Of a stretch of 64,000 bases of DNA, positions 19,161-61,891 are shown piece by piece. The translations under genes and the position numbers were made by a program. Position 1 is the first letter of the stretch. Every line of letters starts with the position of its first letter. Where the stretch lies: positions 124,001 through 188,000 of IMG/VR virus record IMGVR_UViG_3300022752_000015; one strand, given 5' to 3'. The notes under the pieces are model-generated. The model had not been told where the DNA came from. It saw only the letters and a list, made by a program, of their open reading frames with translations, and ran no database searches.

Positions 19161-19162
19161 GA

Positions 19163-23211: not shown

Positions 23212-23212
23212 T

Positions 23213-27143: not shown

Positions 27144-27164
27144 ATTTGCCTCCTTATCTACTCT

Positions 27165-33648: not shown

Positions 33649-33680
33649 ACATTAAACAAATAATTGGCTACATTGATTTT
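33645..33680 (+). promoter_or_regulatory. Sigma70-like promoter, leaderless type
   Basis: TTGAAC-N18-TACATT-N6-GTG(33681). Confidence 0.6.
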
Positions 33681-34874
33681 GTGGCAATTTTTCTAAAAAA
33701 AGAAATACTTGAATCATTTAAAGAAGTCTGTAATGATTTAAGAAATTTTTCAAATACAGAAAAAGTATTATTCCTTGAAAAAGATCAAGTTTTGATTAAA
33801 ACTTCATTTCAAGGAATTTTTAATTTAAAATATTCTAATCAGCTAAAATTAGCTATTCATAGGTTGATAGTAGAACACTGCATTTTATCAGAAAAAATAT
33901 CTCCTGGAGGGTTTGACTTAACATTACATAAAATTGTAAGTTCTGATTTAAACAATCTAGATAAAGCTTCAAATAAAGCTACTTTGAATGATTTAAAAAA
34001 TATAATTGTTTCTCAAACTAAAGACGATGACTTTCTGAACAAAATGTTATTTGATGCCGTGCTTTTAGCTGGATTTGGCGGTAGAATATCTGTAGAAAAA
34101 TCCAGTAATAATTTTGCTTCGATTGAAGTGATTGATGGTTTCACATTTAAAGTAAAAACTTTTGAAGAAAAACCTATCAAAATAGCAAATCCTAAAATCA
34201 TTGTTATTGATGGATTTGTTGAATCTGTTTCTGAAATTAATTTATTGCTTGAAGGTGCAAGTGTAACAAAGCATCCTGTAGTCTTAATAACTAGAGGACT
34301 TCATGAAGAAGTACTAAATACGATAAAAGTTAATAAAATTAGAGGAGTTATTGAAGTTTATCCTATCGTAGTAGAGTTTAATCTAGAAGGTATAAATAAG
34401 CTTAACGACATCTCAATAGCTTGTTCTACATCTTTGTTTTCTAGCAATTTAGGCCAGCTAATTTCTAACATTTCTATAGATGATGCAAAAAAAATAGATG
34501 AAATTTCTATTTATGTTAATTCAATTTGCATAAAGAATCAAGCATCAAAATCTGATGTTAATTCTCATATAAAATTCTTATTGTCTAAAAGAGAAGAATC
34601 AAAAAATGTAGAAGAAATTTACGAAGATAGAATAAGATCTTTATCTTCCAATAATGTACTCATTAGACTTCCAGATACTAACGATTTTGTTGTAAAAAGA
34701 CAATCAATTGACTATTGTCTTAGGTCGATAAAATCTATGATAGAATTTGGAGTATTAAATGATTCTAAACCTTATGGATCTTATGTCTCTTCTAATTTAT
34801 ATTCTAAATTGTTTTTTGAAAAATTAAGTTCATTAGGTGCAGTAATACATAACTCTGCCATTATGTCATACTAG
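33681..34874 (+). CDS. Degenerate GroEL/Cpn60-like chaperonin
   Basis: AGFGGRISVEKS...IEVIDGF...IANPKIIVIDGFVESVSEINLLLE...HPVVLITRG...LNTIKVNKIRG...EDRIRSLS...KRQSIDYCLRSIKSMIEFGV aligns by eye with the GroEL intermediate and apical regions; no GDGTTT motif; start moved to GTG 33681. Confidence 0.7.
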   Translation: MAIFLKKEILESFKEVCNDLRNFSNTEKVLFLEKDQVLIKTSFQGIFNLKYSNQLKLAIHRLIVEHCILSEKISPGGFDLTLHKIVSSDLNNLDKASNKATLNDLKNIIVSQTKDDDFLNKMLFDAVLLAGFGGRISVEKSSNNFASIEVIDGFTFKVKTFEEKPIKIANPKIIVIDGFVESVSEINLLLEGASVTKHPVVLITRGLHEEVLNTIKVNKIRGVIEVYPIVVEFNLEGINKLNDISIACSTSLFSSNLGQLISNISIDDAKKIDEISIYVNSICIKNQASKSDVNSHIKFLLSKREESKNVEEIYEDRIRSLSSNNVLIRLPDTNDFVVKRQSIDYCLRSIKSMIEFGVLNDSKPYGSYVSSNLYSKLFFEKLSSLGAVIHNSAIMSY

Positions 34875-35676
34875 CAAGTATTGCAGCTAGATCATCTTTA
34901 TCAGAAAGTTCAAACCCAAATTTTTCTTTGAATTTTTCATTAAACTTTCTTATATCTTGTTCGTTTGCTCCCTTAAAGATATCTTTAATCTTTACATCAG
35001 GTGTGGCAGGTGTTGGTGGACCACCAGGGGGTGTTGGTGGAGCTGGCGGTTCACTTTCTTGTACTTTTCCTGCAAAAGCGTTTAATGACTTAACTGGCAT
35101 GTTTACAAACTCATCAACTAGACGAGTTATATCAAAAGGAATTTCTAGCTTTTCAGGATTAAGAACTTTAATTTCAGAATTAAAAGAAGAAGTTAAAGCA
35201 GATTTGAACTTTTTATATTCATTAGGAAAAAGTTCTGTCATCTTTTTGCTAACTCTGTTACCGGTTTTACTGTCTTCTAATTCTTTTTTTAGAATATCTT
35301 CATAATCTCTTATAGATGCTCCTGCCTCTGAAATATCTTTTATTACATTATGAAATCCCACAAAAATTCTTTGTAGTTTTTTTATGCCTTCTATTGCTGC
35401 CGCTTCATCCTTAGGTTTTAAAGAACCTGATTGAATTTTTTCTAGATACTCAAATTGTTTGTCTCGAGCTTTTTCTAAAAAACCTTTGATGGCAGTAGAA
35501 CTTATACCTTCGCTGGTTAAAGCATCCAGATATATTTTTGATTGTTTATTAACAGCTCCAGCGAATTTTATAAATTGTTTTTTTTCTTTTTCAGATATCT
35601 CTTTTAGAACCTTAGATTCTAATAAAGCGATTTTTAACGCTACGATATCTTCATTAACTTTGTTTACTTCACTCAT
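34861..35676 (-). CDS. Hypothetical Lys/Glu-rich protein with Pro-rich linker (possible internal virion protein)
   Basis: 271 aa, counter-oriented; EPPAPPTPPGGPPTPATP linker; preceded by the late-type motif ATAATTTATT. Confidence 0.55.
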   Translation of the reverse strand: MSEVNKVNEDIVALKIALLESKVLKEISEKEKKQFIKFAGAVNKQSKIYLDALTSEGISSTAIKGFLEKARDKQFEYLEKIQSGSLKPKDEAAAIEGIKKLQRIFVGFHNVIKDISEAGASIRDYEDILKKELEDSKTGNRVSKKMTELFPNEYKKFKSALTSSFNSEIKVLNPEKLEIPFDITRLVDEFVNMPVKSLNAFAGKVQESEPPAPPTPPGGPPTPATPDVKIKDIFKGANEQDIRKFNEKFKEKFGFELSDKDDLAAILASMT

Positions 35677-35697
35677 GTAATAAATTATATCTTACTT

Positions 35698-45007: not shown

Positions 45008-45036
45008 AAGCGCAATAAATTAAAGAAGGATCAAAG

Positions 45037-49017: not shown

Positions 49018-49029
49018 AGAGAAACGAAC

Positions 49030-50859
49030 ATGGGAATAAAATCAATACCGACAAGAATCATCTATTCAGTAGACGTACCTGAAGTCACTGAGTTGAAGAC
49101 AGAATTTGTTTACAATTATTATGTTCCTAATGAAGCTGTCAGAGACAAAGATATCTTAACCGATGACGCGATAAAAAATATGAATTTATCGCAAAATATC
49201 ATCTCTAAACCACGTACTGAGTTAGCAGAATCTTATTTGGATTATGGTAGCAGAAAATTCCCAAGGTACGTAAAAATTACATTCAAAGGTCCTAAAAAGA
49301 TACCTTACATAGAATCTGGAGAAGAGAACGACATAATTGCTCAAAATTTTGACAAGATTGTGTCAGAAAGTCAGTTTGCTACCAGCTATTACACTGCTGT
49401 AAATTTAAAAAATAATGAAATAGACAAACAGACTGCTTCGATTTTTAAAAATGCTTCAATGCTGCTTCATGATACTGAAGAAATTGATTCTTCAAAGTCT
49501 GTACAGTCTGTAAAAAATTTGGTAGGAAGTTCTAATGAAAAAGTAGTAGGAAATGTGCTAAGCCAGCAAGAATACATTTCTAACACTATCTATAAAAAAA
49601 ATGATGGTAAAAAAACAATAAACAACTACTTGAATAGTTTAAAGAATGTTTCGACCAACATGCAGATTAGTAATAATTTGCTATACGACTTGGTTCAAAG
49701 AGCATCCAATGATTCATTGAATTTAAACAAGGACTCTTTTAAAAAATTAAAAAATTCGGTTGGTAATAAAAGAAATAGCAACAGCAATTTTGACCTGACC
49801 GAAGATGAATTTAAGACGAACGTACAATATATCAATGTAGTATCTTCAGCGGATGATGCGAATGTTCCAACCACCTACAAGCTTGTTGGTTATGTTATAG
49901 AAAAAACAGAAATCTTCCCCGATGGAACCCAAAGAGATTTTAATCCAATTATTATAGAGGATCCAAGATCAACTAGCTATGCAGATTTTGATGTACGGTA
50001 TGGTACTGTCTACATTTACCAAGTTAAATCAATAATGGAAGCAACCTTTGCCGCTGTCGATAACGTCGGACTAGGAATATCGATGATCAGCTCTTTGATC
50101 AGTTCAAAACCTGTGATTTCTTATGTAGAAACGACAGAGGATATAGCTCCTCCTCCGCCTACAGGATTAAAGTTTGTTTGGGATTTTGACAGGATAAATC
50201 CTGTAACCGCAGAATTTGATCATATCTCGAACAGCATTATACCCGGAACTGGTGTTAGAGGAAGTTTATTAATTTGCTGGTCATTCCCAGTAAATTCGCA
50301 AATGGACATCAAAAAATTTCAAGTATTTAGAAGAAAAAATCTGGAACACCCATTTGAGTTATTAAAAGTTTTTGACTTTAACGATGCATCTATCAAATTC
50401 CCAGATGATGAAAAAAAGATTGATCAAAAGTTGGTAGAAATAGTTACACCAAATCCAGAATCTTCTTATTATGATGATGATTTTTTTAAGAATTCAGAGT
50501 ACATTTACGCAGTTGCGTCTGTAGATGCTCACGGAATTAGCTCCAATTACTCTGAACAGTTTCAAGTGAAATTTGATCAATATGCAAATAAACTAATAAT
50601 AAGATTAGTTTCTACTCAAAATGCTCCTAAGAGTTATCCTAACATGTATCTTGAAAAAGATCTATTCTTGGATTCAGTAAAAACAAGCAACAAAAATACG
50701 ATGCATGTTTATTTCACACCAACCTGTTATTCCGTCAACAACGATAACGTCAAAACTGATGTAGTCGTGACAGAAAATGGAAGATACAAGATAAATTTTA
50801 TAAACATAGAGAATCAAGCTTCTACGCAACTCACTATTAACTTGAAAGATTTTCGATAG
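49030..50859 (+). CDS. FN3-domain-containing putative virion protein
   Basis: GYVIEK...SYADFDVRYGTVYIYQVKS; DIAPPPPTGL...ICWS...FQVFRR...YIYAVASVDAHGISSNYS are fibronectin type III patterns. Confidence 0.6.
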   Translation: MGIKSIPTRIIYSVDVPEVTELKTEFVYNYYVPNEAVRDKDILTDDAIKNMNLSQNIISKPRTELAESYLDYGSRKFPRYVKITFKGPKKIPYIESGEENDIIAQNFDKIVSESQFATSYYTAVNLKNNEIDKQTASIFKNASMLLHDTEEIDSSKSVQSVKNLVGSSNEKVVGNVLSQQEYISNTIYKKNDGKKTINNYLNSLKNVSTNMQISNNLLYDLVQRASNDSLNLNKDSFKKLKNSVGNKRNSNSNFDLTEDEFKTNVQYINVVSSADDANVPTTYKLVGYVIEKTEIFPDGTQRDFNPIIIEDPRSTSYADFDVRYGTVYIYQVKSIMEATFAAVDNVGLGISMISSLISSKPVISYVETTEDIAPPPPTGLKFVWDFDRINPVTAEFDHISNSIIPGTGVRGSLLICWSFPVNSQMDIKKFQVFRRKNLEHPFELLKVFDFNDASIKFPDDEKKIDQKLVEIVTPNPESSYYDDDFFKNSEYIYAVASVDAHGISSNYSEQFQVKFDQYANKLIIRLVSTQNAPKSYPNMYLEKDLFLDSVKTSNKNTMHVYFTPTCYSVNNDNVKTDVVVTENGRYKINFINIENQASTQLTINLKDFR

Positions 50860-50941
50860 GCGTTAATCAATTCTTGGCAAATAAAGGAAAGCAATATTTA
50901 ACTAACTAATACTTACGTGTAGATTTAAGAGTAGAGGAATT

Positions 50942-51661
50942 ATGGGTTTTCTTGATCATTCGACCAATAACATCATCCTTGATGCTGTTTTAACGGACAC
51001 GGGCCGACAATTTTTGTCAAGAAATAATGGCGATTTTACTTTGACTAAGTTCGCTCTGGGAGATGATGAAGTAAACTACAGCATTATACAAAAATACGGT
51101 AGAACGGTAGGCAGAGAAAAAATCGAAAAAAACACTCCTATTTTTGAAGCATTAACGAATCAAGCTCATTCTCAGAAATATAGGCTCATAAGTGTATCTA
51201 ATCCTAATTTAGTTAGATTACCGAGCTTCACATACACTGGAGATGCAGCTTCATCTGGAAGTGTTATAACCTTATACACCGTGTCTACTTCTGGAAAAGC
51301 TACATCTTCTAAGATTAATTTAGAACAGACAGTGCTGAATGAAACGTTGATTGATGTCGAATTAAGAGATCAAACTTTTATTGTTGACGTACCAAATTTG
51401 TTCTTGTTGGTAGATTCTGGTAACAAATCTCCAAACAATATAGACAATCAGCAAAGAGCGTATTATACTCTTACCAAATCAGGAACTAATAGCATAGCTG
51501 GATCTACTTTAATGTTTACTGTTAATGCAAAATCTTTAACGCAAACTGTATTTGATGTGTACGGAACAGGTACACAAAAAAATACAATAAAGACCTATGT
51601 TCGCGTGACAGGTATGCAATCAGGCGCTGTGAAAGACATAGCCGTTGAACTCAAACGTTGA
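50942..51661 (+). CDS. Putative baseplate/tail-fibre attachment protein
   Basis: MGFLD...LDAVLTDTGRQFLSR...FTLTKFALGDDEVNY resembles the N-terminal half of P2 gpH-type (DUF3751) collar domains (LT..G...LA...I..MA.GD). Confidence 0.55.
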   Translation: MGFLDHSTNNIILDAVLTDTGRQFLSRNNGDFTLTKFALGDDEVNYSIIQKYGRTVGREKIEKNTPIFEALTNQAHSQKYRLISVSNPNLVRLPSFTYTGDAASSGSVITLYTVSTSGKATSSKINLEQTVLNETLIDVELRDQTFIVDVPNLFLLVDSGNKSPNNIDNQQRAYYTLTKSGTNSIAGSTLMFTVNAKSLTQTVFDVYGTGTQKNTIKTYVRVTGMQSGAVKDIAVELKR

Positions 51662-51673
51662 AAAAAGAAATAT

Positions 51674-52882
51674 ATGGCCACCTATAAAAACTTAGATCCA
51701 TCAGACGTAAAAACTGCTCGTTCTTTTTTAAGTCAATTGATTGACGTAATTCAAGAAGACATCAGCGGATCAACTTCAAGAAGAAAATATCAAGTTTTCG
51801 TAACTGGAGGTGTTGGTCCCGGAATTACGTCTTCATTATTTCAAACCGTCTATGATCAAGATTTTACGTTACAAACGGCTAACCCTGTTTTTGACTGTAC
51901 TGTTGGAATTTATCCCAACTCGGATATTACTTCATCTTCTTTATCATCAGTAGATTCCGCAGGAAAAGAAATTTTTCCTTCATCTTCATTGATGATGAGA
52001 GAAAAGCTTGACAACTATCGTCAGTTTGCGCAACTTTTGTTAGGAGATGCTAATTCTCAATTTGTCGCTCCATATGGATCAGTTAGCGCAAATGATAAAA
52101 TTGATGCCGCGTTCTTTATAGCATTTAAGAGATTATTCGCTCGTGATGCGATAAAGAGAGAATCATTTGCAATGAGATTCTTTCAATCAGCTTCTCTTTG
52201 CAGATACGACGGAGCTCCTAACATTCCTAATCTTTATAAAACATCAGAGATTGGAATGTCGATTTACACTGATATCGGAGCTTCCACCAACAAACTAACT
52301 GAGTTTGGTGGTCAATTAGGCAACATAGTTGATGCCGCTGACACGAATAGAACTGTCGGTCTGCTGTTCTATGACAGAGGAATTGCCGTGATGGATCTAG
52401 AAAAGATCACATCAGCTAGCCAATTCGTGTCTGGAAATATTGATGCCATGTCTCCAACAGGATTGGCTGTGTTAGGTGGACCTGGGACCGAAACTTCAGG
52501 AATCTCTAAATTTATTCCTGACTTTATAGTTTCAGCTTCTATTGACAATGTAGTAGATCACATTTGTGCCACCAGATTTAGTTCGGGATCGCAGACGGCA
52601 ATTACTTTTCAAAACACGACAAATATTAACAGCACGTTAGTCTTTTGCAGAGCAGCGGCTGATGAGTTCAACTATTCTTCGAATCCTACTTTTACAGATT
52701 CACAAAACAGAATAGTTGTAATTGATTCGGGGCAAGAAGACACGCAACAGACTTTCACTTTCGTGACGTCGGTTGGGCTTTATGATCCGAATGATAACTT
52801 GCTCGCAGTTGCTAAGTTAAGTAGACCAGTAGAGAAGAGTCCAGAAAGAGACTTGACCTTTAGAGTACGTCTAGATTTCTGA
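51674..52882 (+). CDS. Putative tail/baseplate structural protein
   Basis: C-terminal EFNYSSNPTF...FVTSVGLYDPNDNLLAVAKLSRPVEK...FRVRLDF, paralogous to the C-terminus of 52905..55400. Confidence 0.6.
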   Translation: MATYKNLDPSDVKTARSFLSQLIDVIQEDISGSTSRRKYQVFVTGGVGPGITSSLFQTVYDQDFTLQTANPVFDCTVGIYPNSDITSSSLSSVDSAGKEIFPSSSLMMREKLDNYRQFAQLLLGDANSQFVAPYGSVSANDKIDAAFFIAFKRLFARDAIKRESFAMRFFQSASLCRYDGAPNIPNLYKTSEIGMSIYTDIGASTNKLTEFGGQLGNIVDAADTNRTVGLLFYDRGIAVMDLEKITSASQFVSGNIDAMSPTGLAVLGGPGTETSGISKFIPDFIVSASIDNVVDHICATRFSSGSQTAITFQNTTNINSTLVFCRAAADEFNYSSNPTFTDSQNRIVVIDSGQEDTQQTFTFVTSVGLYDPNDNLLAVAKLSRPVEKSPERDLTFRVRLDF

Positions 52883-52904
52883 TCCTTAACGAGTTGAAGC
52901 GTGA

Positions 52905-55400
52905 ATGTCAATATACAAAGTAAACCCGACCGACTTTCAAAGCATCACTGTCGCCACTAATCCTAGTAGATATTATTCTTCAAGCTCAAGTGGCGTCACG
53001 GGATCCGTTCACGTTTTTGCGCGCAGATCAAAAATAGAAAAAGAGACAGCGCCTTTATCTTCCTTCATTGAAGCGACACACAATGACGTTGACATCGCTT
53101 CGACGATACAGGGAATAAAGCAACAGATAAAAAGTAAAAAGAATTCGACGACAGGCTCAATAGATGTAAAAAATGCAGTCGAATCTTTTTTAAATTTTGT
53201 AAATGATCAGGGAGTATCTGCAAAGAAGAAAAAAGTTCTTGACGTAATAAGATTCACACCTTCTTTTAACTTCACTTCGAATACAGTGCGAAAGATGGTG
53301 ATAAAAGAGAACTTATCTTCTTATTACAGAGGTGCATACCCATCATCTCACTGGGCTTATGTTAACTATAATTCTTTAAATTTTTTTTCTTCTTCCGATA
53401 TCCCATCTTCATCGGTCCTGTTGTATCCTAACTATGACAATGGGACAATCCACGAAGGTTACTCCTACGGCGCTTACATGCCAAGTGGAGCCATCAGTTT
53501 TGATTTTTACATAAATCCCAGATATAACAATATAGATGAAGGATTTAAAGCAGGAACCATTTTTCATCTTTCATCAACGTATGCGTTATCTTTGGTGTCA
53601 GGTAGCTTAAAAGATGGTCGAGGACGACCCCTGGGGTTTAAGATGCTGTTACAGCTAAGTCACAGCGCCGATATTCCTCCATCAATTGCTACGCAAGGTT
53701 CTTACCCAAATAATTTAGTATTTGAGTCTCAGGACAATGCATTGACATTTAATAAATGGCATCATGTTGTCGTCAGGTGGGGTACAAGTGAAATTAATGC
53801 AGGTACCGGTTCATTCAATGTTGACGGAGTTGACAAAGGTTACTTTGTAGTTCCTTCCGGAACAATAGCTCCGTTGGTATTTCCAGACAACGGAACCGAT
53901 CCAACAAATCCAGATGTTTTGTGCATCGGAAATTATTACGAAGGCAGTAATAGTGGGTTTAATACTCTTAAAAGTTTTTTTGCAAGAGACACGTCTAACA
54001 GAGAAGGTCTGTTAGAACTAGATCCAGCGACGGGCGTAGATGAACCTGACAAATATGCTTTTAATCACCCTCTTAGAGCAGAGGTCCATGATTTATCAAT
54101 AAAAAACTACTATATGTCAGAAGCCGACTTACAAGTTTCTAGCTCGATAGGTCCTTCAAGCATTGATTCTAGAGTGGCTTTTTATGTTCCTCCTTTCTTT
54201 GTCGAAGCAACGCCTGTTAGAAAATTCGTAAATACGTGGGGAGGAATACTACAAACTCCTTTTATTGAAGTCGATGGAACCACGGCTGATCCATTCAACA
54301 TTGCAATGGCATTTGGTGTGGCAGGCCATTACATCAACACTGAAAACTTTTTAAAAGATTTTGCCACCAACAACTTTCCTAGGCAACATCACCTTTCAGC
54401 ATCAGCATTAAACAGCACAACGACAGCTAGATCAGCGAATGAATTTCTTTACGATCAACCTATGGTCAGAAAAAGAAACTTGTTGATCATGCCATGTGAT
54501 GATGGAAATTTCTATCCTGATTACGATTTGCTTAAGAATGAAGAATTGCAAAACCTCTATTCAGATGATTTAGATAACTTCACTCCTGGATTTATCAGCC
54601 TTAATAACATGCTTTTGACATCTTCATTAGTGTTTAACACCTCTTTTGAAGATTCTGAATCTACTAATAAAGCAGAAAAAGACCCAGATTTCTTCATAAA
54701 AGAGACGATCGGCGTCACGCCTGAAAATCCCGCTTCATCTGGTGGGCCTGCTTACAAGAATTATTTGAGAAATACCAACAAAGCAATTTATGCAGGACAA
54801 TCAGGACAAGGTCTTCAAGAAAATGCTCCATTGACGATATATCAAAGAACAGGAGATTCTAGCTCTAATCAAGTAACTTTCTTTGATATCAGCAATCTGT
54901 ACTATGGGATGAGTATTTTACCCGGCAGTTTCATGATAAAAGATGTTTCTCTTTCAGGCTCTAACGGAGAAATGAAGATTACCATTAGAGACAACGGCAA
55001 CGGAGGGTTGTATAGAGCAGATAGCGATTCGCCTACTTGCAAGTGGAACACTGTAGGAACAATCTATTACAATGAAGGAATCATTGCAATAAAGAGTCCG
55101 CATCTGTACTTCTTTGGTAAGGAAAACTTTGAAGTTTCATTTAAAGGTGAACAAAACATTCACGTTTTGAAGTTAGACATGTCAGCACCAGTCAATCATC
55201 TAAATTCATCTTCAAATCCCACATTCGTGAAGGTTCCATCCACGCTGAATCCTAATGAATATGACTCTGACTTCGTGTATATTTCAGGCATAAATTTTCA
55301 TGATGATAATCTAAACGTGATCATGAAAACTCAGCTTGCACAGCCCATCATGAAACGACACTCTGATAAGATAGCTTTCAGAGTGAAATACGATTGGTAA
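52905..55400 (+). CDS. Putative tail/baseplate structural protein with LamG-like domain
   Basis: SFDFYINP...NKWHHVVVRW...FNVDG...LCIGN (LamG-like); C-terminal LNSSSNPTF...YISGINFHDDNLNVIMKTQLAQPIMKR...FRVKYDW. Confidence 0.6.
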   Translation: MSIYKVNPTDFQSITVATNPSRYYSSSSSGVTGSVHVFARRSKIEKETAPLSSFIEATHNDVDIASTIQGIKQQIKSKKNSTTGSIDVKNAVESFLNFVNDQGVSAKKKKVLDVIRFTPSFNFTSNTVRKMVIKENLSSYYRGAYPSSHWAYVNYNSLNFFSSSDIPSSSVLLYPNYDNGTIHEGYSYGAYMPSGAISFDFYINPRYNNIDEGFKAGTIFHLSSTYALSLVSGSLKDGRGRPLGFKMLLQLSHSADIPPSIATQGSYPNNLVFESQDNALTFNKWHHVVVRWGTSEINAGTGSFNVDGVDKGYFVVPSGTIAPLVFPDNGTDPTNPDVLCIGNYYEGSNSGFNTLKSFFARDTSNREGLLELDPATGVDEPDKYAFNHPLRAEVHDLSIKNYYMSEADLQVSSSIGPSSIDSRVAFYVPPFFVEATPVRKFVNTWGGILQTPFIEVDGTTADPFNIAMAFGVAGHYINTENFLKDFATNNFPRQHHLSASALNSTTTARSANEFLYDQPMVRKRNLLIMPCDDGNFYPDYDLLKNEELQNLYSDDLDNFTPGFISLNNMLLTSSLVFNTSFEDSESTNKAEKDPDFFIKETIGVTPENPASSGGPAYKNYLRNTNKAIYAGQSGQGLQENAPLTIYQRTGDSSSNQVTFFDISNLYYGMSILPGSFMIKDVSLSGSNGEMKITIRDNGNGGLYRADSDSPTCKWNTVGTIYYNEGIIAIKSPHLYFFGKENFEVSFKGEQNIHVLKLDMSAPVNHLNSSSNPTFVKVPSTLNPNEYDSDFVYISGINFHDDNLNVIMKTQLAQPIMKRHSDKIAFRVKYDW

Positions 55401-55412
55401 CAGATCTAGTTC

Positions 55413-55805
55413 ATGACAGTAAAAAAGAGAAAGAAAAAAGGAAGGTATCATAGAGGTACTCATAATTCTCCTCTGGCTGGCGAGTGTAAATTTCGTTCAG
55501 GATGGGAGCAAAAGTACATGGAGTATTTAGATGCTGACCCGAACGTAGAATCTTGGTCTTACGAAAAGATCGTTATCAAATACATCTCTAATAAGTCTTC
55601 AGGAAAAATTCGAAAGTACTATCCTGATTTTTTTGTGAAGATGAAAAATGGCGATCTACTCGTCGTGGAGATCAAACAAAAAAGGAAGTTAGATTCCTCG
55701 GCCGTCAAGAAAAAATCGGCAGCGGCACAACAGTGGTGCATGATCAACAATGCCTCTTTCTTAATTCTTACTGAATTAGAATTAAAAGATATGGGAATCT
55801 TATAA
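55413..55805 (+). CDS. Head completion nuclease (T4 gp4 / TnsA-N-like)
   Basis: FRSGWEQKYMEYLD...WSYE..VIKY...YYPDFFV...VVEIK...K..AAQQWC....FLILTE. Confidence 0.8.
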   Translation: MTVKKRKKKGRYHRGTHNSPLAGECKFRSGWEQKYMEYLDADPNVESWSYEKIVIKYISNKSSGKIRKYYPDFFVKMKNGDLLVVEIKQKRKLDSSAVKKKSAAAQQWCMINNASFLILTELELKDMGIL

Positions 55806-55845: not shown

Positions 55846-56403
55846 GTGTCAAAAATTGTTTTAGGTCTTGACGTTTCAACTTCAGTGACAGGTGTTTGCG
55901 TTATAGATAAAGATGTTCAACCTGATGACAAGGGTTCTCACATCCTTCTCCTCGACAAAGTAGAGTTCAAGAAGTGTAAAACATTTTGGGAGAAGTCTGA
56001 TGTTATTGAATCAGTTTTATCAGACATATTCCATCGACAGAAACTAGCACCAGTCGTATTCGCTCTTGAGGAACCGTTGTTGGGATTTCAAAAAGGAATG
56101 TCATCAGCAACAACCATCACCACCCTCATGAGGTTTAATGGTATAGTTTCTTATATCGGTAGAAGAATATTTCAGGTGGACCCAACCTACATCTCATCCT
56201 CGCACGCCAGAAAACTATGCGGAATAAAGATGCAACGAACATCTATCGCCGGAATGAATGGTAAGGAGCAGGTCTTCAAACACATGTCTGAAAACGACCT
56301 GAAGCATGTGGATTGGCCGAAGAAGAAAAATGGTCAACCCGTCGATTGGAGCCGTGATGCTACAGATGCATATGTAATAGCTCGAGCTGCATGTCTCTTA
56401 TAA
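55846..56403 (+). CDS. RuvC-like Holliday junction resolvase
   Basis: VLGLDVSTSVTG...ALEEP...L.RFNG...ARK...DATDAYVIA acidic catalytic residues; upstream TTTACC-N17-GATAAT-N5-GTG. Confidence 0.75.
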   Translation: MSKIVLGLDVSTSVTGVCVIDKDVQPDDKGSHILLLDKVEFKKCKTFWEKSDVIESVLSDIFHRQKLAPVVFALEEPLLGFQKGMSSATTITTLMRFNGIVSYIGRRIFQVDPTYISSSHARKLCGIKMQRTSIAGMNGKEQVFKHMSENDLKHVDWPKKKNGQPVDWSRDATDAYVIARAACLL

Positions 56404-56433: not shown

Positions 56434-56444
56434 ATAATTAGTTA
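56434..56444 (+). promoter_or_regulatory. Putative late-promoter motif ATAATTAGTTA
   Basis: Identical 11-mer at 57788-57798 and variant ATACATAGTTA at 62190-62200, each in a short intergenic gap before a gene. Confidence 0.5.
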
Positions 56445-56465
56445 CATCCCAAAGGAGTATTTCAC

Positions 56466-56765
56466 ATGAAGATTACCCCTTCGCAATTACGTAAAATCAT
56501 AAAAGAAGAAGTCAAAAGATTGTCAGAAGGTCCTGAAGAGGAACAAAAGGTTTTTTATGACGCTTTACGTCAAGCAGAAGATGCCTTAATGAAAGTCGTA
56601 GAGATCGTAGAAAAATCCGGAAAGGGAAGCCCTGAAAAATTTGGAGGACAAGGTTCTCAACAGGTTAATCTAAAGGCGGTCCTTGCACAGATTTCCAACC
56701 AAAGAGAAATTGAACAAGACGCACCAGATTATGGCGGCGGTTTATTCGATCTGCCTGGCAAATAA
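56466..56765 (+). CDS. Hypothetical protein with IIKEE-type N-terminal leader (possible internal head protein)
   Basis: MKITPSQLRKIIKEEVKRLSE; AAGGAG RBS. Confidence 0.55.
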   Translation: MKITPSQLRKIIKEEVKRLSEGPEEEQKVFYDALRQAEDALMKVVEIVEKSGKGSPEKFGGQGSQQVNLKAVLAQISNQREIEQDAPDYGGGLFDLPGK

Positions 56766-56801
56766 TTGAACATATAACTCTACAAGTATTACGATGCTAT
56801 C
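56766..56801 (+). promoter_or_regulatory. Sigma70-like promoter, leaderless type
   Basis: TTGAAC-N18-TACGAT-N6-GTG(56802). Confidence 0.6.
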
Positions 56802-57785
56802 GTGGCCATTCGTTCGGTCTCCGATAGCATTAATTTTTTTGAATCTGTTTTTGGTAAGGGGCGTATATCTTCCAACGGTATCAACTTTGACGTTCGTTGT
56901 CCAATATGCGCCTCGGCAGATCCAACGAAAAAGAAACTTTCTATTCGCACTGACACCACCGCAAATCATTGTTGGGTTTGTGGGTGGAAGTCTCGTACCA
57001 TAGTTCCTCTAATAAGAAAATTTGGAACTCAAAATCAACTAGCAGAATTCAAAGAGTTGTTTGGACTGTTCGATAACTCTTTTCATCTGGTTACTGGTGA
57101 AAAAGAAGAAAAACAAAAGCTCGAACTTCCAAAAGATTTTAGGCTTTTGACGTTAGCAAATAGTATGGATCCTGACGTAAAGGCCGCCTGGCGCTATGTG
57201 TACTCTCGAGGACTTACTGACAGAGATGCTTGGTACTTCAAACTAGGAGTTTCTGATGAGCCTAGATGGAAGAGAAGAATCATCATGCCTTCATTTGATG
57301 CGCAAGGAAATTTAAATTTTTTTGTAGCTAGAGCGATCGATAAGGACAAAAAGCCAAAGTATGATAGCCCAGACGTAGATAAAAATCCTATCGTCTTTAA
57401 CGATCTAAACATAGATTGGTCAAAGAGATTGGTGCTAGTAGAAGGTTCATTCGATCTAGTAAAGTGCCCAGAAAACTCTACTGCAATATTAGGATCGGAT
57501 CTTGACGAGAGACACGAAATCTTTAATAAAATCTTACTACACAACACACCAATTGCGTTATCTTTAGATGGAGACATGTGGGACAAAAAGACTCCTAAAA
57601 TAGCGAAAAAGTTGCAGGAATATAATGTAGACGTCATCGTAGTTGATGTTCGTCCGTGGGGAGACCCAGGTAGCATGTCTAAAATCGAATTTGAAGAAGC
57701 GTTAAAAGAAGCAAAGCAAATTAGCTGGGACGATAACTTTAGTAGAAAGTTAAAAAAAGCTACTGCAGTAAGTTTTGCATTTTAG
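56802..57785 (+). CDS. DNA primase (DnaG/T4 gp61-like)
   Basis: Zn finger CPIC...HCWVC; YVYSRGL...RRIIMPS...FFVAR...PKY; TOPRIM LVEGSFD...LDGD...GDPG. Confidence 0.85.
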   Translation: MAIRSVSDSINFFESVFGKGRISSNGINFDVRCPICASADPTKKKLSIRTDTTANHCWVCGWKSRTIVPLIRKFGTQNQLAEFKELFGLFDNSFHLVTGEKEEKQKLELPKDFRLLTLANSMDPDVKAAWRYVYSRGLTDRDAWYFKLGVSDEPRWKRRIIMPSFDAQGNLNFFVARAIDKDKKPKYDSPDVDKNPIVFNDLNIDWSKRLVLVEGSFDLVKCPENSTAILGSDLDERHEIFNKILLHNTPIALSLDGDMWDKKTPKIAKKLQEYNVDVIVVDVRPWGDPGSMSKIEFEEALKEAKQISWDDNFSRKLKKATAVSFAF

Positions 57786-57800
57786 TGATAATTAGTTATT

Positions 57801-58715
57801 GTGAGAAAGCACGTAATTACAGAAGCCAGGATTAGAGAAATAATCCAAGAAGAAATAGCAATTCAACAGCTCCTTGAAGAAGGATTTTTAGATTCTGCTA
57901 AAGATGCAATAAAAAAATTGTCAGTTGCAGTTACTAATAGATTTAAGGAAGCAGCAGACAAGTGGGCAAACGTTATCTCTGAAAAGATAAACATGATGCA
58001 GACGATCCCTCCAGAGATATTGACAATCGTCAATGCACTCGAAGAAGGAAAGAAGTCGACAGGAGAATCAATAGAGTTAGATGAAACGTTAAAGCTAGCT
58101 CAGTCTCTCAGTAAAGAAAATCCTCTTGCTTCTGCTGAAGAAGAATTATCTGGTCCTATCTACGCAAAAGCAAAAGAATTAAAAGAAATGTATGTTGTAT
58201 TGTCCGATAATTCTTACGTCAAACAAAGAAAAAACTTACACGAAGCAGGAATAATAACTGGAGCAGGTATTGGATTAGCGATCATCGGAGGTTTACCTTT
58301 GTTATTTAAAGGGTTAACTAAGCTGGCTGTCTATTTGAAAGCTGAAAAATTAGCTTCAATCTTTGAAAAAGCTGAACATGTTACTCACGCTTTTGAGCAA
58401 AAATTTATAAAATTTGTAATCCCTAGCAAACTTTCATATTTCGTATATAAGTTTTTAGCTGAAAAAGGATTTCATACGGCTGGTGAAAAAGAAGTTTTAT
58501 CTTACGAAAGATATAAATCTTCGAAATCAGAGCAAAAAACAGCAGAATTAATCTATAAGGCTTTATTGATATATTTTGCTTTTCAAGGACTAGCAGGCGC
58601 TCTCAAGGCTGGTGCATCCTTGTTAGGATTTGTTGAAGGAACTGCAACAACAGTGAAAGGCATCGAACTAGCAAAAGGATTTGCTGACGTTCGAAAAATT
58701 GTCAGCGGAGCATGA
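57801..58715 (+). CDS. Hypothetical protein with IIQEE-type leader and hydrophobic helices (possible internal/ejected virion protein)
   Basis: MRKHVITEARIREIIQEEIAIQQLLEEG...NLHEAG then GIITGAGIGLAIIGGLPLLF and ALLIYFAFQGLAGAL hydrophobic segments. Confidence 0.55.
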   Translation: MRKHVITEARIREIIQEEIAIQQLLEEGFLDSAKDAIKKLSVAVTNRFKEAADKWANVISEKINMMQTIPPEILTIVNALEEGKKSTGESIELDETLKLAQSLSKENPLASAEEELSGPIYAKAKELKEMYVVLSDNSYVKQRKNLHEAGIITGAGIGLAIIGGLPLLFKGLTKLAVYLKAEKLASIFEKAEHVTHAFEQKFIKFVIPSKLSYFVYKFLAEKGFHTAGEKEVLSYERYKSSKSEQKTAELIYKALLIYFAFQGLAGALKAGASLLGFVEGTATTVKGIELAKGFADVRKIVSGA

Positions 58716-58753: not shown

Positions 58754-61700
58754 ATGCTACGAATTGCGCATACAGCAGACGTGCACTGGCGTGGGCTTAG
58801 TCGACATGATGAATATCGAGAGATATTTTCTGCTTTTATAAATGACTGTAAGAAGAGCCGCGTCGACCACATCTTCATTGGTGGTGATATCTTTCATACA
58901 AAAACATCAGGAATTTCTCCTGAATACATCAACCAACTAACGTGGTGGCTAAATGCCATGTCTGAAGTTGCAGTGGTGCACATCATATTGGGTAACCATG
59001 ATGGTAACCTAACTAATCTTTCTAGGCAAGACGCAGTTTCTCCGATTGTTGATGCAATGAAAAATGATCGGATAAAGCTCTACAAGAAAAGTGGTACTTA
59101 CGAATTTTCTCCTGGATACAATTGGTGTGTTTTTAGTCTCTTTGACGAAGAAGGTTGGAAAGATGTAAAACCAGTCCCAGGAATGATCAACATCGCGTGT
59201 TTCCATGGATCAGTAAGAGGATGCGTAACGGAAACAGGATGGGACATAACAGAAGGCATCAGCACTGATTTTTTCAATGAATATGACTTTGTATTTCTAG
59301 GTGACATACACAAACGACAAATGTTAGCCTACAGAGATGGAAAGCCTTGGATAGGATTTCCAGGTACACCCATTCAGCAAAACTACGCAGAAGAGTTAGA
59401 TCATGGATATTTGCTTTGGGATATTGGTTCAGCATCCAACTGGGATGTTAAGTTTTGTCAACTTCCTAATGTTAAGCCTTACGTAACGATTGATTGGCAA
59501 GAGAATCATGAAAAGTTAATCAACGAAGCTTTGCTTTATCCAAAGCAGTCAAGATTTCGTATTAGATCTAACGTACCAATGTCACAAGGTGACATTCAGA
59601 CGATTTCTAATCAACTGAAAACTACATTTCAAGCAACGGAAGTTACTTTTAAAACAGACTGTAAAGTAGAGACGAAAAAAATCTCAACGTCAGATGTTGT
59701 AATAGAGAAATCTGATATTAGATCTAATGAAGTGATCTTATCTCTTTTGCGTTCTTATGCAAAAGAAAACAAATATTCTAACGTAAACTGGGAAGCGGTA
59801 GAAAATGATGTAAAAAAGTATCTTTCTTTGGTCACAACGACGGATGATTTAGCTAGAGGATCTTCATGGTCTCTTAAACAGTTGAAATGGGATAACATTT
59901 TTGCTTATGGCGAAGGCAATGAGATAGATTTTTCAAACTTGAATGGAATAGTAGGAATTTTTGGTCCCAACAGGATTGGAAAATCTTCGATTATAGGCAC
60001 AATCATGTATTCTTTATTCAACACGACCGATAGAGGATCCATGAAGAACATTTACGTTTGTAACGTAAGAAAGCCTTACTGTTCATCCAGGGCAATATTT
60101 GAACACAACGGTAAATCTTATGTTGTAGAAAGGCAAACGACAAAACAGCTGAATAAAAAAGGCGGAGTAAGTGCTTCAACAGCTCTTAACCTTTTTAAGA
60201 TTAATGACGATGAAGCAGAAGATCTAGGCGGCGAGCAAAGAACAGACACTGAAAAGATCATTAGATCGTTGTTAGGATCTCCTGATGACTTCTTGCTGAC
60301 TTCTTTTTCTGCACAAGGAGAAACCAACGCATTCATTGCATTATCATCAGCCAAAAGAAGATCATTGTTGTCTAGATTTCTAGATTTAGATGTCTTTGAT
60401 AAAATGTACGAAAATTGCAACAAAGAGCTAAATGGATTTAAAGCAAGGTTAAAGAATTACCCAGAAAAAGATTGGGATGCCTTGAAGAAACAAGGAGAAG
60501 ATCTTTGTATAGACCTTCAAAAAAAGATTGAAGATCTGCAGATCAAAATATCTGATACTCAAAATTTGCTAACGGACGTCAAGTACAAGCTGTCTTTGCA
60601 TAAAGATCTAAAGCCAGTAACAAAAATTCAGCTTGAAGCTCAAGAGAAAAAAGTTTCTTCGCTAGAAAAGCAAGCGCAAGAATGTTCTTCTTATATCGAT
60701 TCATTAAAAGCAGAAATATCATCTTTAACTTCAAAACTTGAAACTGTCAATTCTTTTATTGAAAGTGAAGACATTGATGAACTTAAAACCAAACTTACCG
60801 CAATAGATTCTATCGAAAAATCTATCACAAGTCTAAAACATTCTTACGAGTTAGAAACTGCTACTTTAAAACAACAACAAAAATCTCTTGCGTTGTTGGA
60901 TGAAGTCCCTTGTGGTGATGAATACCCCACTTGCAAATTCATCAAAGATGCTCACTTAGATAAGTCAAAATTTCAAAATCAAAAAGAAAAAGAAGCCAAT
61001 ATAAAAGCATCTCTTGACAAGGCAATCAACTCTTTAAATTTGTTAGATAAAAATTCCATAATTTCAAAAATCTCTAAATATGAAAAAGCTGTTGGTTTAT
61101 TGTCTAACATCAAATTGGAAATCTCTAAGAAAGAAACAGAAATTGAAAAGTGCAAATCTTCCTGCGAGATTTGTTTAGAGAACTTAAAAGAAGCAAAGAC
61201 CAAGTTAGTTGACATTCAAAAGGCTTTAAAAAATAATGAAAATTATGAGGTTGTTGCCTTACGTTCAAAATTAGAAGAATTATCTAGTATTGCTAGAGAT
61301 CATGACGATGAAAAGATACGATTAGCGACTCAGCATGGAAGAGCTTTATCTGATCTAGAAAAATTGAAATCTGAAAAAGATTCTAGAGAGAGTTTGATTC
61401 GTGAGATGAAATCGACGGAAATGATATGCGATGCCTTTTCAAAAAAAGGTCTTCCTTTAATGATCACGAAAACTCAGCTTCCTGTCATCAATCAAGAGAT
61501 TTCAAAAATTTTACAAGGTATCGTAGATTTTACAGTAGAACTTGAAAATGATGATGAAACAGACTCTACGGAAATATACATCAACTATGGAGACAGCAGG
61601 AGGATAATTGAGCTATGTTCAGGAATGGAAAAAACTATCTCATCAATTGCAATTAGAGTAGCCTTAGTTAATATTTCAACTCTTCCAAAATTGGATATGT

Positions 61701-61891
61701 TTATAATCGACGAAGGATTTGGAACGTTAGACGAATCTGGAGTGGAAGCATGTAGTAGATTGCTCAATAGCCTGAAGAGGTATTTTAAGACAATTTTGAT
61801 GATTACCCATGTGGATGGAATAAAAGATATGGCAGATCATATTATCGAAATAACCAAGCAAGAAAAAGATTCTAAGGTGGTTGTCACATGA
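58754..61891 (+). CDS. Fused Mre11/SbcD nuclease - Rad50/SbcC ATPase (T4 gp47-gp46-like)
   Basis: HTADVH, GGDIFH, GNHD, FHG, GDIH (metallophosphoesterase); GPNRIGKSS (Walker A), SAQG (Q-loop), long coiled coil, LCSGMEK (signature), IIDEGFG (Walker B), ITH, all in one frame. Confidence 0.9.
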   Translation: MLRIAHTADVHWRGLSRHDEYREIFSAFINDCKKSRVDHIFIGGDIFHTKTSGISPEYINQLTWWLNAMSEVAVVHIILGNHDGNLTNLSRQDAVSPIVDAMKNDRIKLYKKSGTYEFSPGYNWCVFSLFDEEGWKDVKPVPGMINIACFHGSVRGCVTETGWDITEGISTDFFNEYDFVFLGDIHKRQMLAYRDGKPWIGFPGTPIQQNYAEELDHGYLLWDIGSASNWDVKFCQLPNVKPYVTIDWQENHEKLINEALLYPKQSRFRIRSNVPMSQGDIQTISNQLKTTFQATEVTFKTDCKVETKKISTSDVVIEKSDIRSNEVILSLLRSYAKENKYSNVNWEAVENDVKKYLSLVTTTDDLARGSSWSLKQLKWDNIFAYGEGNEIDFSNLNGIVGIFGPNRIGKSSIIGTIMYSLFNTTDRGSMKNIYVCNVRKPYCSSRAIFEHNGKSYVVERQTTKQLNKKGGVSASTALNLFKINDDEAEDLGGEQRTDTEKIIRSLLGSPDDFLLTSFSAQGETNAFIALSSAKRRSLLSRFLDLDVFDKMYENCNKELNGFKARLKNYPEKDWDALKKQGEDLCIDLQKKIEDLQIKISDTQNLLTDVKYKLSLHKDLKPVTKIQLEAQEKKVSSLEKQAQECSSYIDSLKAEISSLTSKLETVNSFIESEDIDELKTKLTAIDSIEKSITSLKHSYELETATLKQQQKSLALLDEVPCGDEYPTCKFIKDAHLDKSKFQNQKEKEANIKASLDKAINSLNLLDKNSIISKISKYEKAVGLLSNIKLEISKKETEIEKCKSSCEICLENLKEAKTKLVDIQKALKNNENYEVVALRSKLEELSSIARDHDDEKIRLATQHGRALSDLEKLKSEKDSRESLIREMKSTEMICDAFSKKGLPLMITKTQLPVINQEISKILQGIVDFTVELENDDETDSTEIYINYGDSRRIIELCSGMEKTISSIAIRVALVNISTLPKLDMFIIDEGFGTLDESGVEACSRLLNSLKRYFKTILMITHVDGIKDMADHIIEITKQEKDSKVVVT

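What the first reader, a model, noticed from the sequence alone, without database searches (positions are those of the whole stretch)
56466..58715. Two unrelated proteins share an N-terminal 'IT...LR.II.EE...L.E' leader: candidate capsid-targeting/processing signal
Seen: MKITPSQLRKIIKEEVKRLSE (56466) and MRKHVITEARIREIIQEEIAIQQLLEEG (57801), each behind an identical ATAATTAGTTA motif, with unrelated bodies; the second has hydrophobic Gly-rich helices after NLHE. 34861..35676 has a weaker version (VNE...LLE...LKE). Known: T4 internal proteins carry an N-terminal capsid-targeting sequence removed by the prohead protease after L/I-x-E. Inference: these are packaged cargo proteins ejected into the host, one possibly membrane-active.
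Basis: inference. Interest (0 to 1): 0.6.

Follow-up and report, generated by a model that had tools for sequence, protein, structure and literature searches.

The report
Shared capsid-targeting leader in jumbo phage
Two unrelated genes of a freshwater T4-related jumbo phage begin with the same about 22-residue peptide, which also heads at least a dozen other proteins of this phage and thousands in metagenomes, and most likely directs them into the capsid before the head protease cuts it off.

Summary
The window lies in a 213-kb lake-water phage contig that encodes a T4-type prohead protease (Peptidase_S77) and a gp23-like capsid protein.

- **In this genome:** the leader M-K-[IL]-T-x-x-Q-L-R-x-I-I-K-E-E-x3-[LIV]-x-E starts at Met1 of ORF99, ORF304 and at least 10 further ORFs. 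Their bodies show no detectable similarity.
- **In the head module:** two of these ORFs lie directly after the protease gene.
- **Leader boundary:** in 118 IMG/VR leader proteins, conservation stops at residue 22. Residues 20-22 or 19-21 form [LIVM]-x-E, the T4 gp21 cleavage motif, in 79 of the 118.
- **ORF304 family:** [LIV]-x-E27-G28 is invariant.
- **Link to the protease:** 18 of 23 leader-bearing contigs carry S77, including all 4 that are at least 90% complete.
- **Spread:** 11,427 protein clusters carry the leader, with no Pfam family. It is absent from T4, KVP40, Syn9, P-SSM2 and HTVC008M.

Best reading (about 0.6): a sequence-distinct analogue of the T4 capsid-targeting sequence. Packaging, cleavage and ejection are inferred, not shown.

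Two parts of the finding fail. The ATAATTAGTTA motif is part of a genome-wide TATAAT-like promoter element and is not specific to leader genes. The third example (34861-35676) has no leader.

The parts
56434..56444 (+). ATAATTAGTTA, overlapping a TATAAT-like -10 element 22-32 nt upstream of the ORF99 start (probably ORF99's own promoter)
   Evidence: the ATAATTA core is the most enriched upstream 7-mer genome-wide (12 against 0.9 expected). It is not specific to leader genes.
56451..56457 (+). Shine-Dalgarno-like AAAGGAG, 8 nt before the ORF99 ATG
   Evidence: Read directly from the sequence.
56466..56528 (+). ORF99 leader, aa 1-21 (MKITPSQLRKIIKEEVKRLSE). Candidate protease sites are I-K-E14 and L-S-E21|G22.
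56466..56765 (+). ORF99, 99 aa: leader plus a 78-aa soluble body with no family assigned. It is an accessory gene, absent at this position in a relative with 62% identity.
   Evidence: (only 4 close homologues).
57788..57798 (+). Second copy of ATAATTAGTTA. The embedded GATAAT ends 8 nt before the GTG start, which is the geometry of a leaderless mRNA, or coupling to the primase gene.
57801..57881 (+). ORF304 leader, aa 1-27, ending L-E-E27|G28. [LIV]-x-E-G is invariant in 25 diverse homologues.
   Evidence: alignment A1: E27 and G28 invariant, R12 and E18 at least 90% conserved.
57801..58715 (+). ORF304, 304 aa, all-helical. It belongs to a conserved family (127 clusters, 300-340 aa) found on contigs up to 351 kb. 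Its position between the primase and the SbcCD fusion is conserved.
58242..58337 (+). ORF304 aa 148-179, a Gly-rich hydrophobic helix (GIITGAGIGLAIIGGLPLLFKGL), TM-like
   Evidence: 19-residue window Kyte-Doolittle hydropathy 2.09; G156, G163, G171 invariant; P166 in at least 90%; helices 156-178.
58548..58634 (+). ORF304 aa 250-278, a second hydrophobic conserved helix (LLIYFAFQGLAGALKAGASLLGFVEG)

Best explanation
The shared N-terminus is a capsid (prohead-core) targeting propeptide of a T4-related jumbo phage lineage. It does the job of the T4 internal-protein CTS but has a different sequence.

Proposed mechanism:
1. The roughly 22-residue leader (M-K-I/L-T-x-x-Q-L-R-x-I-I-K-E-E-x3-L/I/V-x-E) forms an amphipathic helix.
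2. The helix docks the attached protein onto the scaffolding core while the prohead assembles.
3. The phage's gp21-type serine protease (Peptidase_S77) cuts after Glu in [L/I/V]-x-E. The sites are E21|G22 in ORF99 and E27|G28 in ORF304, and possibly also I-x-E14.
4. The mature protein is left inside the head, to be ejected with the DNA.

ORF99 would be a small accessory cargo protein. ORF304 would be a conserved internal or ejection protein with membrane-inserting helices.

Shown: the leader family, its strict N-terminal position, the unrelated bodies, the conserved boundary at [LIVM]-x-E, the presence of the T4-type protease and its co-occurrence with the leader, and the leader on head-module ORFs.

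Inferred: docking to the core, cleavage, packaging, ejection and membrane activity.
For: 1. Genome type. The contig is a 212.8-kb virus record. It has a Peptidase_S77 gene (98.7 bits) that is 35% identical to T4 gp21, with His77 and Ser130 at the positions of T4 His85 and Ser140. It has a gp23-like capsid protein (213 bits) whose L58-K59-E60|S61 aligns with T4 L63-T64-E65|A66 (the 65-residue gp23 propeptide is described in PMC5694885).

2. Leader family. 11-14 ORFs in the contig begin with the leader exactly at Met1. All-against-all BLASTP of the bodies gives nothing below E = 0.1.

3. Head module. The two small ORFs after the protease gene (genome 192175-192600 and 192658-192894) start MKMTRNELKDLVKECLVEILSE|G and MKLTSNLLKRIIMQEV. 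In four other genomes, ORFs closely downstream of the protease gene (adjacent in one, after one intervening ORF in the others) start MAKITKRMLKGIVKECLVEILSE|G and similar.

4. Boundary. Among 118 unique IMG/VR leader proteins retrieved by a pattern that fixes only residues 7-15, residues 1-6 and 16-22 are also conserved. Conservation collapses after residue 22. [LIVM]-x-E has its Glu at residue 21 or 22 in 79 of 118, against 1-5 of 118 at positions 27-39. 115 bodies fall into 94 clusters.

5. ORF304 family: [LIV]-x-E27-G28 is invariant over 25 homologues down to 39% identity. In the 317-aa family the leader is invariant while the body drops to 28% identity.

6. Co-occurrence. S77 is found in 18 of 23 leader-bearing contigs and in all 4 that are at least 90% complete. 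There are 12-39 leader ORFs per complete genome, many in tandem arrays like T-even IP loci.

7. Selection acts on the peptide. Identical residues use different codons in 57% of pairs, against 61% expected from codon usage.

8. Precedent. The T4 CTS is 10-19 residues, sits on unrelated internal proteins, and is cut at L/I-x-E (PMC9026906, PMC3012670). The T4 leaders were read from AF158101. SPN3US gp47 is an ejection protein with a propeptide and a TM segment.
Against:
- ORF99, ORF304 and most other leader genes of this contig sit among replication and nucleotide-metabolism genes. ORF99 is preceded by a sigma-70-like TATAAT element, so late expression is not shown. T4 IP genes are also scattered.
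- About a third of leaders lack [LIVM]-x-E at residues 21-22.
- The S77 co-occurrence could reflect shared ancestry only, and no control set was run.
- One of the two head-module ORFs (192175) was matched by eye and not by the independent profile. The other scores only E = 0.01.
- The apparent resemblance to the scaffold protein is not supported.
- ORF304 with two hydrophobic helices might be an assembly factor rather than cargo.
Confidence: 0.6

Rival explanations
1. The leader does target proteins to the prohead core, but the proteins are core, scaffold or inner-body components. They would shape or fill the prohead and be degraded or retained, like T4 gp67/gp68, rather than being ejected effectors. 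ORF304 could be a membrane-anchored assembly factor.
For: - Leader ORFs lie directly after the protease gene in five genomes.
- Several bodies are Ala/Gly/Lys/Glu-rich and helical (for example the 177-aa ORF at genome 66586).
- ORF304 is conserved in sequence and position, unlike typical arms-race cargo.
- T4 core proteins are cut into fragments by gp21.
Against: - Cargo diversity is extreme (94 clusters among 115 bodies). Tandem hypervariable arrays look like T-even IP loci, not structural parts.
- ORF99 is dispensable in a close relative.
Confidence: 0.17
2. The leader is a shared N-terminal interaction or regulatory helix that has nothing to do with the capsid. It might recruit proteins to the replication machinery, a membrane site or a host factor, or act as a degron for timed proteolysis.
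For: - ORF99 and ORF304 flank the primase gene. Other leader genes abut the DNA polymerase and the ribonucleotide reductase.
- In the Flavobacterium phage, one leader gene also lies near the primase.
- The ORF99 promoter is sigma-70-like.
Against: - It does not explain why conservation ends at a gp21-type [LIVM]-x-E.
- It does not explain why leader ORFs follow the protease gene in the head module.
- It does not explain why multi-leader in-frame fusions exist.
- Gene position is a weak clue in T4-like genomes, where IP genes are scattered.
Confidence: 0.15
3. The similarity is a nucleic-acid feature, such as a translation-initiation enhancer or a recombination cassette spreading a promoter plus 5' coding segment, or it is chance or compositional similarity between Lys/Glu-rich helices.
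For: The two genes share an identical 11-mer upstream. The leader is rich in AAA/GAA codons.
Against: - Codon choice at identical residues is as free as genome codon usage predicts (0.57 against 0.61).
- The upstream regions of the other leader genes differ.
- An independent profile gives E = 1e-4 to 1e-13 for N-terminal hits only.
- 11,427 clusters match in a 1.8-billion-protein library.
Confidence: 0.02

Closest known systems
T4 capsid targeting sequence (CTS) of internal proteins IPI, IPII, IPIII and Alt, processed by prohead protease gp21
   Same: - A short N-terminal leader starting at Met1 (MK...), shared by otherwise unrelated proteins.
- It ends in L/I-x-E followed by a small residue.
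- The phage has a gp21-type S77 protease and a gp23-type capsid protein with a conserved L-x-E site.
- Cargo genes are scattered and also arranged in hypervariable tandem arrays (PMC9026906, PMC3012670).
   Different: - No sequence similarity to MKTYQEFIAE. The leader profile finds nothing in T4, KVP40, Syn9, P-SSM2 or HTVC008M.
- It is about twice as long (about 22 aa) and has two candidate sites (E14 and E21/22).
- The repertoire is far larger (12-39 genes per genome against 3-4 in T4).
- In-frame multi-leader fusions occur.
- Function is unproven here.
Long N-terminal propeptides of head and ejection proteins in phiKZ-like giant phages (phiKZ, 201phi2-1, SPN3US), cut by gp175/gp245 proteases
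   Same: - Giant phages with many internal proteins processed after Glu by a gp21-related protease.
- SPN3US gp47 combines a propeptide with a TM segment in the mature part, as proposed for ORF304.
   Different: - Those propeptides are mostly 80-160 residues, are not a single shared sequence, and use S/A-x-E or A-x-E motifs.
- This phage has a canonical S77 protease and gp23-type capsid protein, and a short uniform leader.
PHROG families of unknown function: phrog_7338, phrog_3323, phrog_6906, phrog_660, phrog_134
   Same: Their profiles match the leader at or near their N-termini, so leader proteins already sit unannotated in phage databases.
   Different: They are defined by whole small proteins and carry no functional annotation. 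ORF99 and ORF304 themselves match none of them. No Pfam family covers the leader.

Membership tests
T4-type capsid targeting sequence / internal-protein system | The leader lies at the extreme N-terminus of the precursor | tested here: met
   All strong hits in the genome start at Met1. In 90 of 110 IMG/VR instances, Q7 lies six residues after a Met.
T4-type capsid targeting sequence / internal-protein system | The same leader sits on otherwise unrelated proteins | tested here: met
   Body-only BLASTP gives no pair below E = 0.1 in this genome. There are 94 clusters among 115 IMG/VR bodies.
T4-type capsid targeting sequence / internal-protein system | The leader ends in the gp21 cleavage motif L/I-x-E | tested here: met
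   ORF99 has L-S-E21|G. ORF304 has L-E-E27|G, invariant in 25 homologues. 79 of 118 IMG/VR leaders have [LIVM]-x-E with Glu at residue 21 or 22, where conservation stops. The motif definition comes from PMC9026906.
T4-type capsid targeting sequence / internal-protein system | The phage encodes a gp21-family (Peptidase_S77) prohead protease with catalytic His and Ser | tested here: met
   PF03420 at 98.7 bits. 35% identity to T4 gp21. It aligns to PDB 5JBL with His77 and Ser130 at the two positions that read Ala in 5JBL but His85 and Ser140 in the T4 genome record (that these are the catalytic residues, mutated in the crystal construct, is from my own knowledge of the T4 enzyme).
T4-type capsid targeting sequence / internal-protein system | Sequence homology to the T4 CTS (MKTYQEFIAE / MKTFKEF...ITE) | tested here: not met
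   The leader profile A3 finds nothing in T4, KVP40, Syn9, P-SSM2 or HTVC008M. The T4 leaders read from AF158101 share only the MK start and the I-x-E end.
T4-type capsid targeting sequence / internal-protein system | The protein is physically packaged in the head, processed there and ejected into the host | not testable with these tools
T4-type capsid targeting sequence / internal-protein system | Expression is compatible with head assembly (late or continuous) | tested here: inconclusive
   There is no TATAAATA upstream of any gene. TATATA lies upstream of 4/14 leader genes against 4/248 others (p = 3e-4), but ORF99 has a TATAAT-like element. No RNA run holds the locus.
Holin / membrane-active protein (ORF304 only) | Significant family or fold match plus TM segments | tested here: inconclusive
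   Two hydrophobic helices. The only family hit is phrog_6918 holin at E = 0.0075, with no domain stretch passing. No fold match in PDB or BFVD reaches E <= 0.001; ClyA and SmhA appear at E about 0.6 and TM-score below 0.2.

The most novel reading that the evidence does not exclude
A large, mostly uncultivated lineage of T4-related freshwater and marine (jumbo) phages uses one universal, easily recognisable 22-residue tag to load dozens of different proteins per virion into the capsid, sometimes as polyprotein-like strings of tag-cargo units. If so, a simple sequence search (11,427 clusters so far) would list the injected effector and anti-defence repertoire of this lineage, including membrane-inserting ejection proteins such as ORF304.
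Probability: 0.45. Interest if true: 0.8.

Novelty: new variant of a known kind. Interest (0 to 1): 0.66.

Why it matters
Proteins injected with phage DNA are the first phage products to act in the host. T4 IPI*, for example, blocks a restriction enzyme. They are almost impossible to predict from sequence. If this leader is a capsid-targeting tag, it marks thousands of candidate injected proteins in abundant lake and ocean phages that have no cultured representative. That would make their early host-takeover and anti-defence arsenal directly listable and testable. It would also show that the CTS principle, known from T-even phages, is a general and independently diversified strategy. Finally, it would offer a second, longer packaging tag for protein delivery by phage capsids.

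Tried and rejected
- **Third example.** The ORF at 34861-35676 is not hit by either leader profile, so it was dropped.
- **Upstream 11-mer as a leader-gene signal.** Rejected. It is part of a genome-wide TATAAT(T) element.
- **Scaffold resemblance.** The 646-aa scaffold-like protein (MKMSKQLYEE..., RIRELIEKELLEE) looked similar to the leader by eye, but the leader HMM gives no score.
- **T4 gp68 versus the 141-aa ORF after the protease.** No similarity.
- **Family searches.** Pfam and PHROGs on ORF99 and on nine of the other leader proteins gave nothing (the 78-aa ORF at 192658 and the weak 316-aa case were not scanned). ORF304 gave only a weak phrog_6918 holin match (E = 0.0075).
- **ORF304 structure.** AF2 model with pLDDT 67. 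Foldseek against PDB and BFVD gave no match at E <= 0.001.
- **317-aa leader protein.** AF2 model with pLDDT 49.5, too poor to search with.
- **Cultured phages.** blastn and tblastn of the region, of ORF304, of a 24-aa leader and of a two-leader protein found no match. The short-query tests are weak.
- **The search for related loci with the 24-column leader alignment.** It was replaced by a degenerate DNA pattern search.
- **Complex prediction of the protease with ORF99 residues 1-45.** This is neither support nor evidence against.
- **Read laying.** Not used. No RNA run holds the locus, and contigs cannot show transcript ends.
- No alternative genetic code was used.
Full report
**1. What is in the sequence**

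ORF99 (window 56466-56765, ATG, preceded by AAAGGAG) begins MKITPSQLRKIIKEEVKRLSE. ORF304 (57801-58715, GTG, 15 nt after the primase stop codon) begins (M)RKHVITEARIREIIQEEIAIQQLLEEG. The 11-mer ATAATTAGTTA occurs exactly at 56434-56444 and 57788-57798.

The neighbours are replication and recombination genes:
- a TnsA-like endonuclease (55413-55805);
- a RuvC-like resolvase (55846-56403);
- a primase (56802-57785), lying between ORF99 and ORF304;
- a fused SbcD-SbcC (58754-61891).

ORF99 and ORF304 have no Pfam family. ORF304 has only a weak holin PHROG hit (E = 0.0075).

**2. What genome this is**

The window is bases 124001-188000 of a 212,804-bp IMG/VR virus record, estimated 59% complete. 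It is found in lake and freshwater metagenomes from about 19 studies.

The record encodes a Peptidase_S77 (T4 gp21-type) prohead protease at genome 191536-192144 (98.7 bits). This protease is 35% identical to T4 gp21 and aligns to PDB 5JBL. His77 and Ser130 sit at the positions of T4 His85 and Ser140 (the identity of the catalytic residues is from my own knowledge).

It also encodes a gp20-type portal and a gp23-type major capsid protein. In the BLASTP alignment, the capsid protein's L58-K59-E60|S61 falls on T4 gp23 L63-T64-E65|A66, the known maturation site (the 65-residue propeptide is described in PMC5694885).

The replication genes are T4-like: family-B polymerase, UvsX, gp32-like SSB, ribonucleotide reductase and DnaB. 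This is therefore a T4-related jumbo phage whose protease should cut after Glu in L/I-x-E (PMC9026906).

**3. The leader is a genome-wide family**

A regular-expression scan and two profile searches gave the same picture. One profile was built only from ORF304-family N-termini. The other was built from eight of the genome's own leaders.

Leaders starting exactly at Met1 (genome coordinates):
- 180466 (ORF99)
- 181801 (ORF304)
- 199632 (115 aa)
- 66586 (177 aa)
- 61345 (186 aa)
- 55539 (317 aa)
- 205897 (124 aa)
- 69420 (87 aa)
- 29296 (160 aa)
- 42508 (180 aa)
- 192658 (78 aa)

Weaker cases are 192175 (141 aa), 40077 and 34706. The ORF304-only profile finds ORF99 at E = 1.5e-4 among 3330 ORFs. 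The bodies show no pairwise similarity (all E > 0.1) and no Pfam family above its threshold (one sub-threshold DctP match, 17.2 bits against a 23.4 cut-off).

Codon usage at identical leader residues differs in 57% of pairs, against 61% expected. The constraint is therefore on the peptide and not on DNA or RNA.

**4. Link to the head**

Directly after the protease gene lie a 141-aa ORF (MKMTRNELKDLVKECLVEILSE|G) and a 78-aa ORF (MKLTSNLLKRIIMQEV...). They are followed by a 164-aa ORF, an acidic 646-aa scaffold-like protein and the capsid gene.

In four other leader-bearing genomes, ORFs closely downstream of the protease gene (adjacent in one, after one intervening ORF in the others) begin MAKITKRMLKGIVKECLVEILSE|G, MAKISKSMLKGIVKECLVEILAE|G, MKKSELKNIIKECVKEVIFE|E...KLTPALLKKLVMEEKAKLME|T and similar. 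The same leader architecture therefore sits on conserved proteins at the position where T4 keeps its small prohead-core proteins.

Caveat: the 141-aa ORF of this genome was matched by eye, and the 78-aa ORF scores E = 0.01 with the independent profile.

**5. The boundary of the leader is a protease-type site**

In 90 of 110 instances the Gln is residue 7 after MK[ILV]T.

Among 118 unique proteins, residues 1-6 and 16-22 are conserved even though the pattern did not fix them. The consensus is MKITK(R)QLR(R)IIKEE-x-x-(R/K)-(L/V)-(L)-x-E. Conservation falls to background after residue 22. [LIVM]-x-E has its Glu at residue 21 or 22 in 79 of 118, against 1-5 of 118 at positions 27-39. The 115 bodies form 94 BLAST clusters.

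- In the ORF304 family (127 clusters, contigs up to 351 kb), [LIV]-x-E27-G28 is invariant in 25 homologues down to 39% identity.
- In the 317-aa family, the leader is invariant while the body falls to 28% identity.
- ORF99 has L-S-E21|G22.
- All leaders also contain I-x-E14, so two cuts are possible.

**6. Distribution**

- **Co-occurrence with the protease.** S77 is present in 18 of 23 leader-bearing contigs and in all 4 that are at least 90% complete. The five without it are fragments. No control set was run, so shared ancestry could explain part of this.
- **Leader ORFs per genome**:

| Genome | Size | Leader ORFs |
|---|---|---|
| G004 | 190 kb | 12 |
| G007 | 281 kb | 17 |
| G006 | 293 kb | 25 |
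| G008 | 284 kb | 39 |
| Relative G001 | 278 kb | 24 |
| Huge phage LR756508 | 484 kb | 26 |

- **Tandem arrays.** G008 has at least 13 tandem leader ORFs in 13.5 kb.
- **Global count.** A 78-sequence profile finds 11,427 representative proteins (50% identity clusters, E <= 0.001) in a 1.84-billion-protein library.
- **Multi-leader ORFs.** The top hits hold 2-3 in-frame leader copies, some without an internal Met, which resembles polyproteins.
- **Databases.** No Pfam family covers the leader. Several PHROGs of unknown function match it at or near their N-termini.
- **Cultured phages.** The leader is absent from T4, KVP40, Syn9, P-SSM2, HTVC008M, S-SSM4 and RM378. Among the ten cultured phages tested, only Flavobacterium phage vB_FspM_immuto carries N-terminal copies. 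It has two N-terminal short-variant leaders on hypothetical proteins.

**7. Interpretation**

The best-supported reading is a functional analogue of the T4 capsid-targeting sequence. In T4, unrelated internal proteins share a 10-19-residue N-terminal leader (MKTYQEFIAE|A in IPII and IPIII, read from AF158101). That leader directs them to the scaffolding core and is removed by gp21 at L/I-x-E. The internal-protein repertoire is hypervariable apart from the CTS (PMC3012670, PMC9026906).

Every sequence-testable defining feature is met here except homology to the T4 leader itself. I therefore call it a new variant of a known kind and not a member of the T4 CTS family by descent. Packaging, cleavage and ejection remain inferred (confidence about 0.6).

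Rivals:
- Core or inner-body components rather than ejected cargo (0.17).
- A capsid-unrelated interaction helix or degron, suggested by the replication-gene neighbourhood and the sigma-70-like promoter of ORF99 (0.15).
- A nucleic-acid-level or chance similarity (0.02; refuted).

**8. The two genes themselves**

*ORF99.* It is accessory. It has only 4 close homologues. It is absent between the resolvase and primase genes of a relative with 62% identity, where the ORF304 homologue keeps its place and its GTG start. It appears to have its own promoter and ribosome-binding site.

*ORF304.* It is all-helical (AF2 pLDDT 67). It has two conserved hydrophobic helices: a Gly-rich one at aa 148-179 and a second at aa 250-278. 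There is no fold match. A membrane-inserting ejection protein is plausible, and SPN3US gp47 is a precedent. A membrane-anchored assembly factor is equally possible.

**9. The upstream motif**

ATAATTA is the most enriched 7-mer upstream of genes (12 genes against 0.9 expected). Many genes carry a TATAAT(T) element ending 6-7 nt before the start codon, some with TTGAAC-N17 upstream (read by eye from the upstream sequences printed). ORF304 and the 34861-35676 ORF are among them. The motif is not specific to leader genes.

A different element, TATATA, lies upstream of 4/14 leader genes against 4/248 other genes (p = 3e-4). Its meaning is unknown.

**10. Limits**

There is no RNA or proteomic evidence. 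The counts from the genome search use a profile (A2) that includes the two head-module ORFs. The S77 association has no control.

Noticed in passing
window 33645-35700, 41516, 57788-57801 and many genome sites (genome 23045, 38383, 46653, 55677, 118180, 137815, 148250, 159688, 165503): A TATAAT(T)/ATATTTA element ends 6-7 nt before the ATG or GTG of many genes. Some have TTGAAC-N17 upstream. This is the geometry expected for leaderless mRNAs. ORF304 (GTG) and the 271-aa ORF at window 34861-35676 are of this kind.
   Followed up: partly
window 17342-28109, minus strand: A long phage-borne sugar-nucleotide and polysaccharide pathway: PD-(D/E)XK nuclease, UDP-glucose dehydrogenase, GNAT, DegT-type aminotransferase, Polysacc_synt_2 dehydratase, GT2 and GT1. 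Two more nucleotide-sugar epimerases and a cytidylyltransferase lie at genome 45-60 kb.
   Followed up: partly
outside the window: genome 203000-212804 (L014:15000-20000, L015): The last ~10 kb of the contig have 52-58% GC against about 35% elsewhere. This may be a chimeric join or a foreign island, yet the region carries a leader ORF (205897-205523, MKLTLPRLKQIIREEF). The scaffold and capsid genes are also about 50% GC.
   Followed up: no
proteins P0132, P0133, P0135, P0139, P0144, P0152, P0233 (global library): Single predicted ORFs contain 2-3 in-frame leader copies separating different bodies. Some internal copies lack a Met (P0139, P0144). They look like polyprotein-style strings of leader-cargo units.
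   Followed up: partly
G008:C1:270900-284429 (L155); also G007 238-241 kb and G006 48-56 kb: Dense tandem arrays of small leader ORFs, at least 13 in 13.5 kb at the genome end. They are reminiscent of the hypervariable internal-protein loci of T-even phages.
   Followed up: partly
window 58754-61891: The SbcD-like nuclease and the SbcC/Rad50-like ATPase (T4 gp47 and gp46 equivalents) are fused in one 1045-aa ORF. The fusion is conserved in a relative with 62% identity.
   Followed up: no
genome 54586-55539, 66053-66586, 192658-192894, 205523-205897 (outside the window): A (G/T)ATATATA element lies 25-35 nt upstream of four leader genes, one of them in the head module. TATATA is found upstream of 4/14 leader genes against 4/248 others (p = 3e-4). 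The T4 late promoter TATAAATA is found upstream of no gene.
   Followed up: partly
window 42518-55400, plus strand: A run of large ORFs (829, 1326, 609, 239, 402 and 831 aa) has no PHROG match. The 831-aa ORF, the only one also scanned against Pfam, has no Pfam match either; it is conserved in the 62% relative. They are possibly tail or baseplate proteins of a lineage with no annotated relatives.
   Followed up: no
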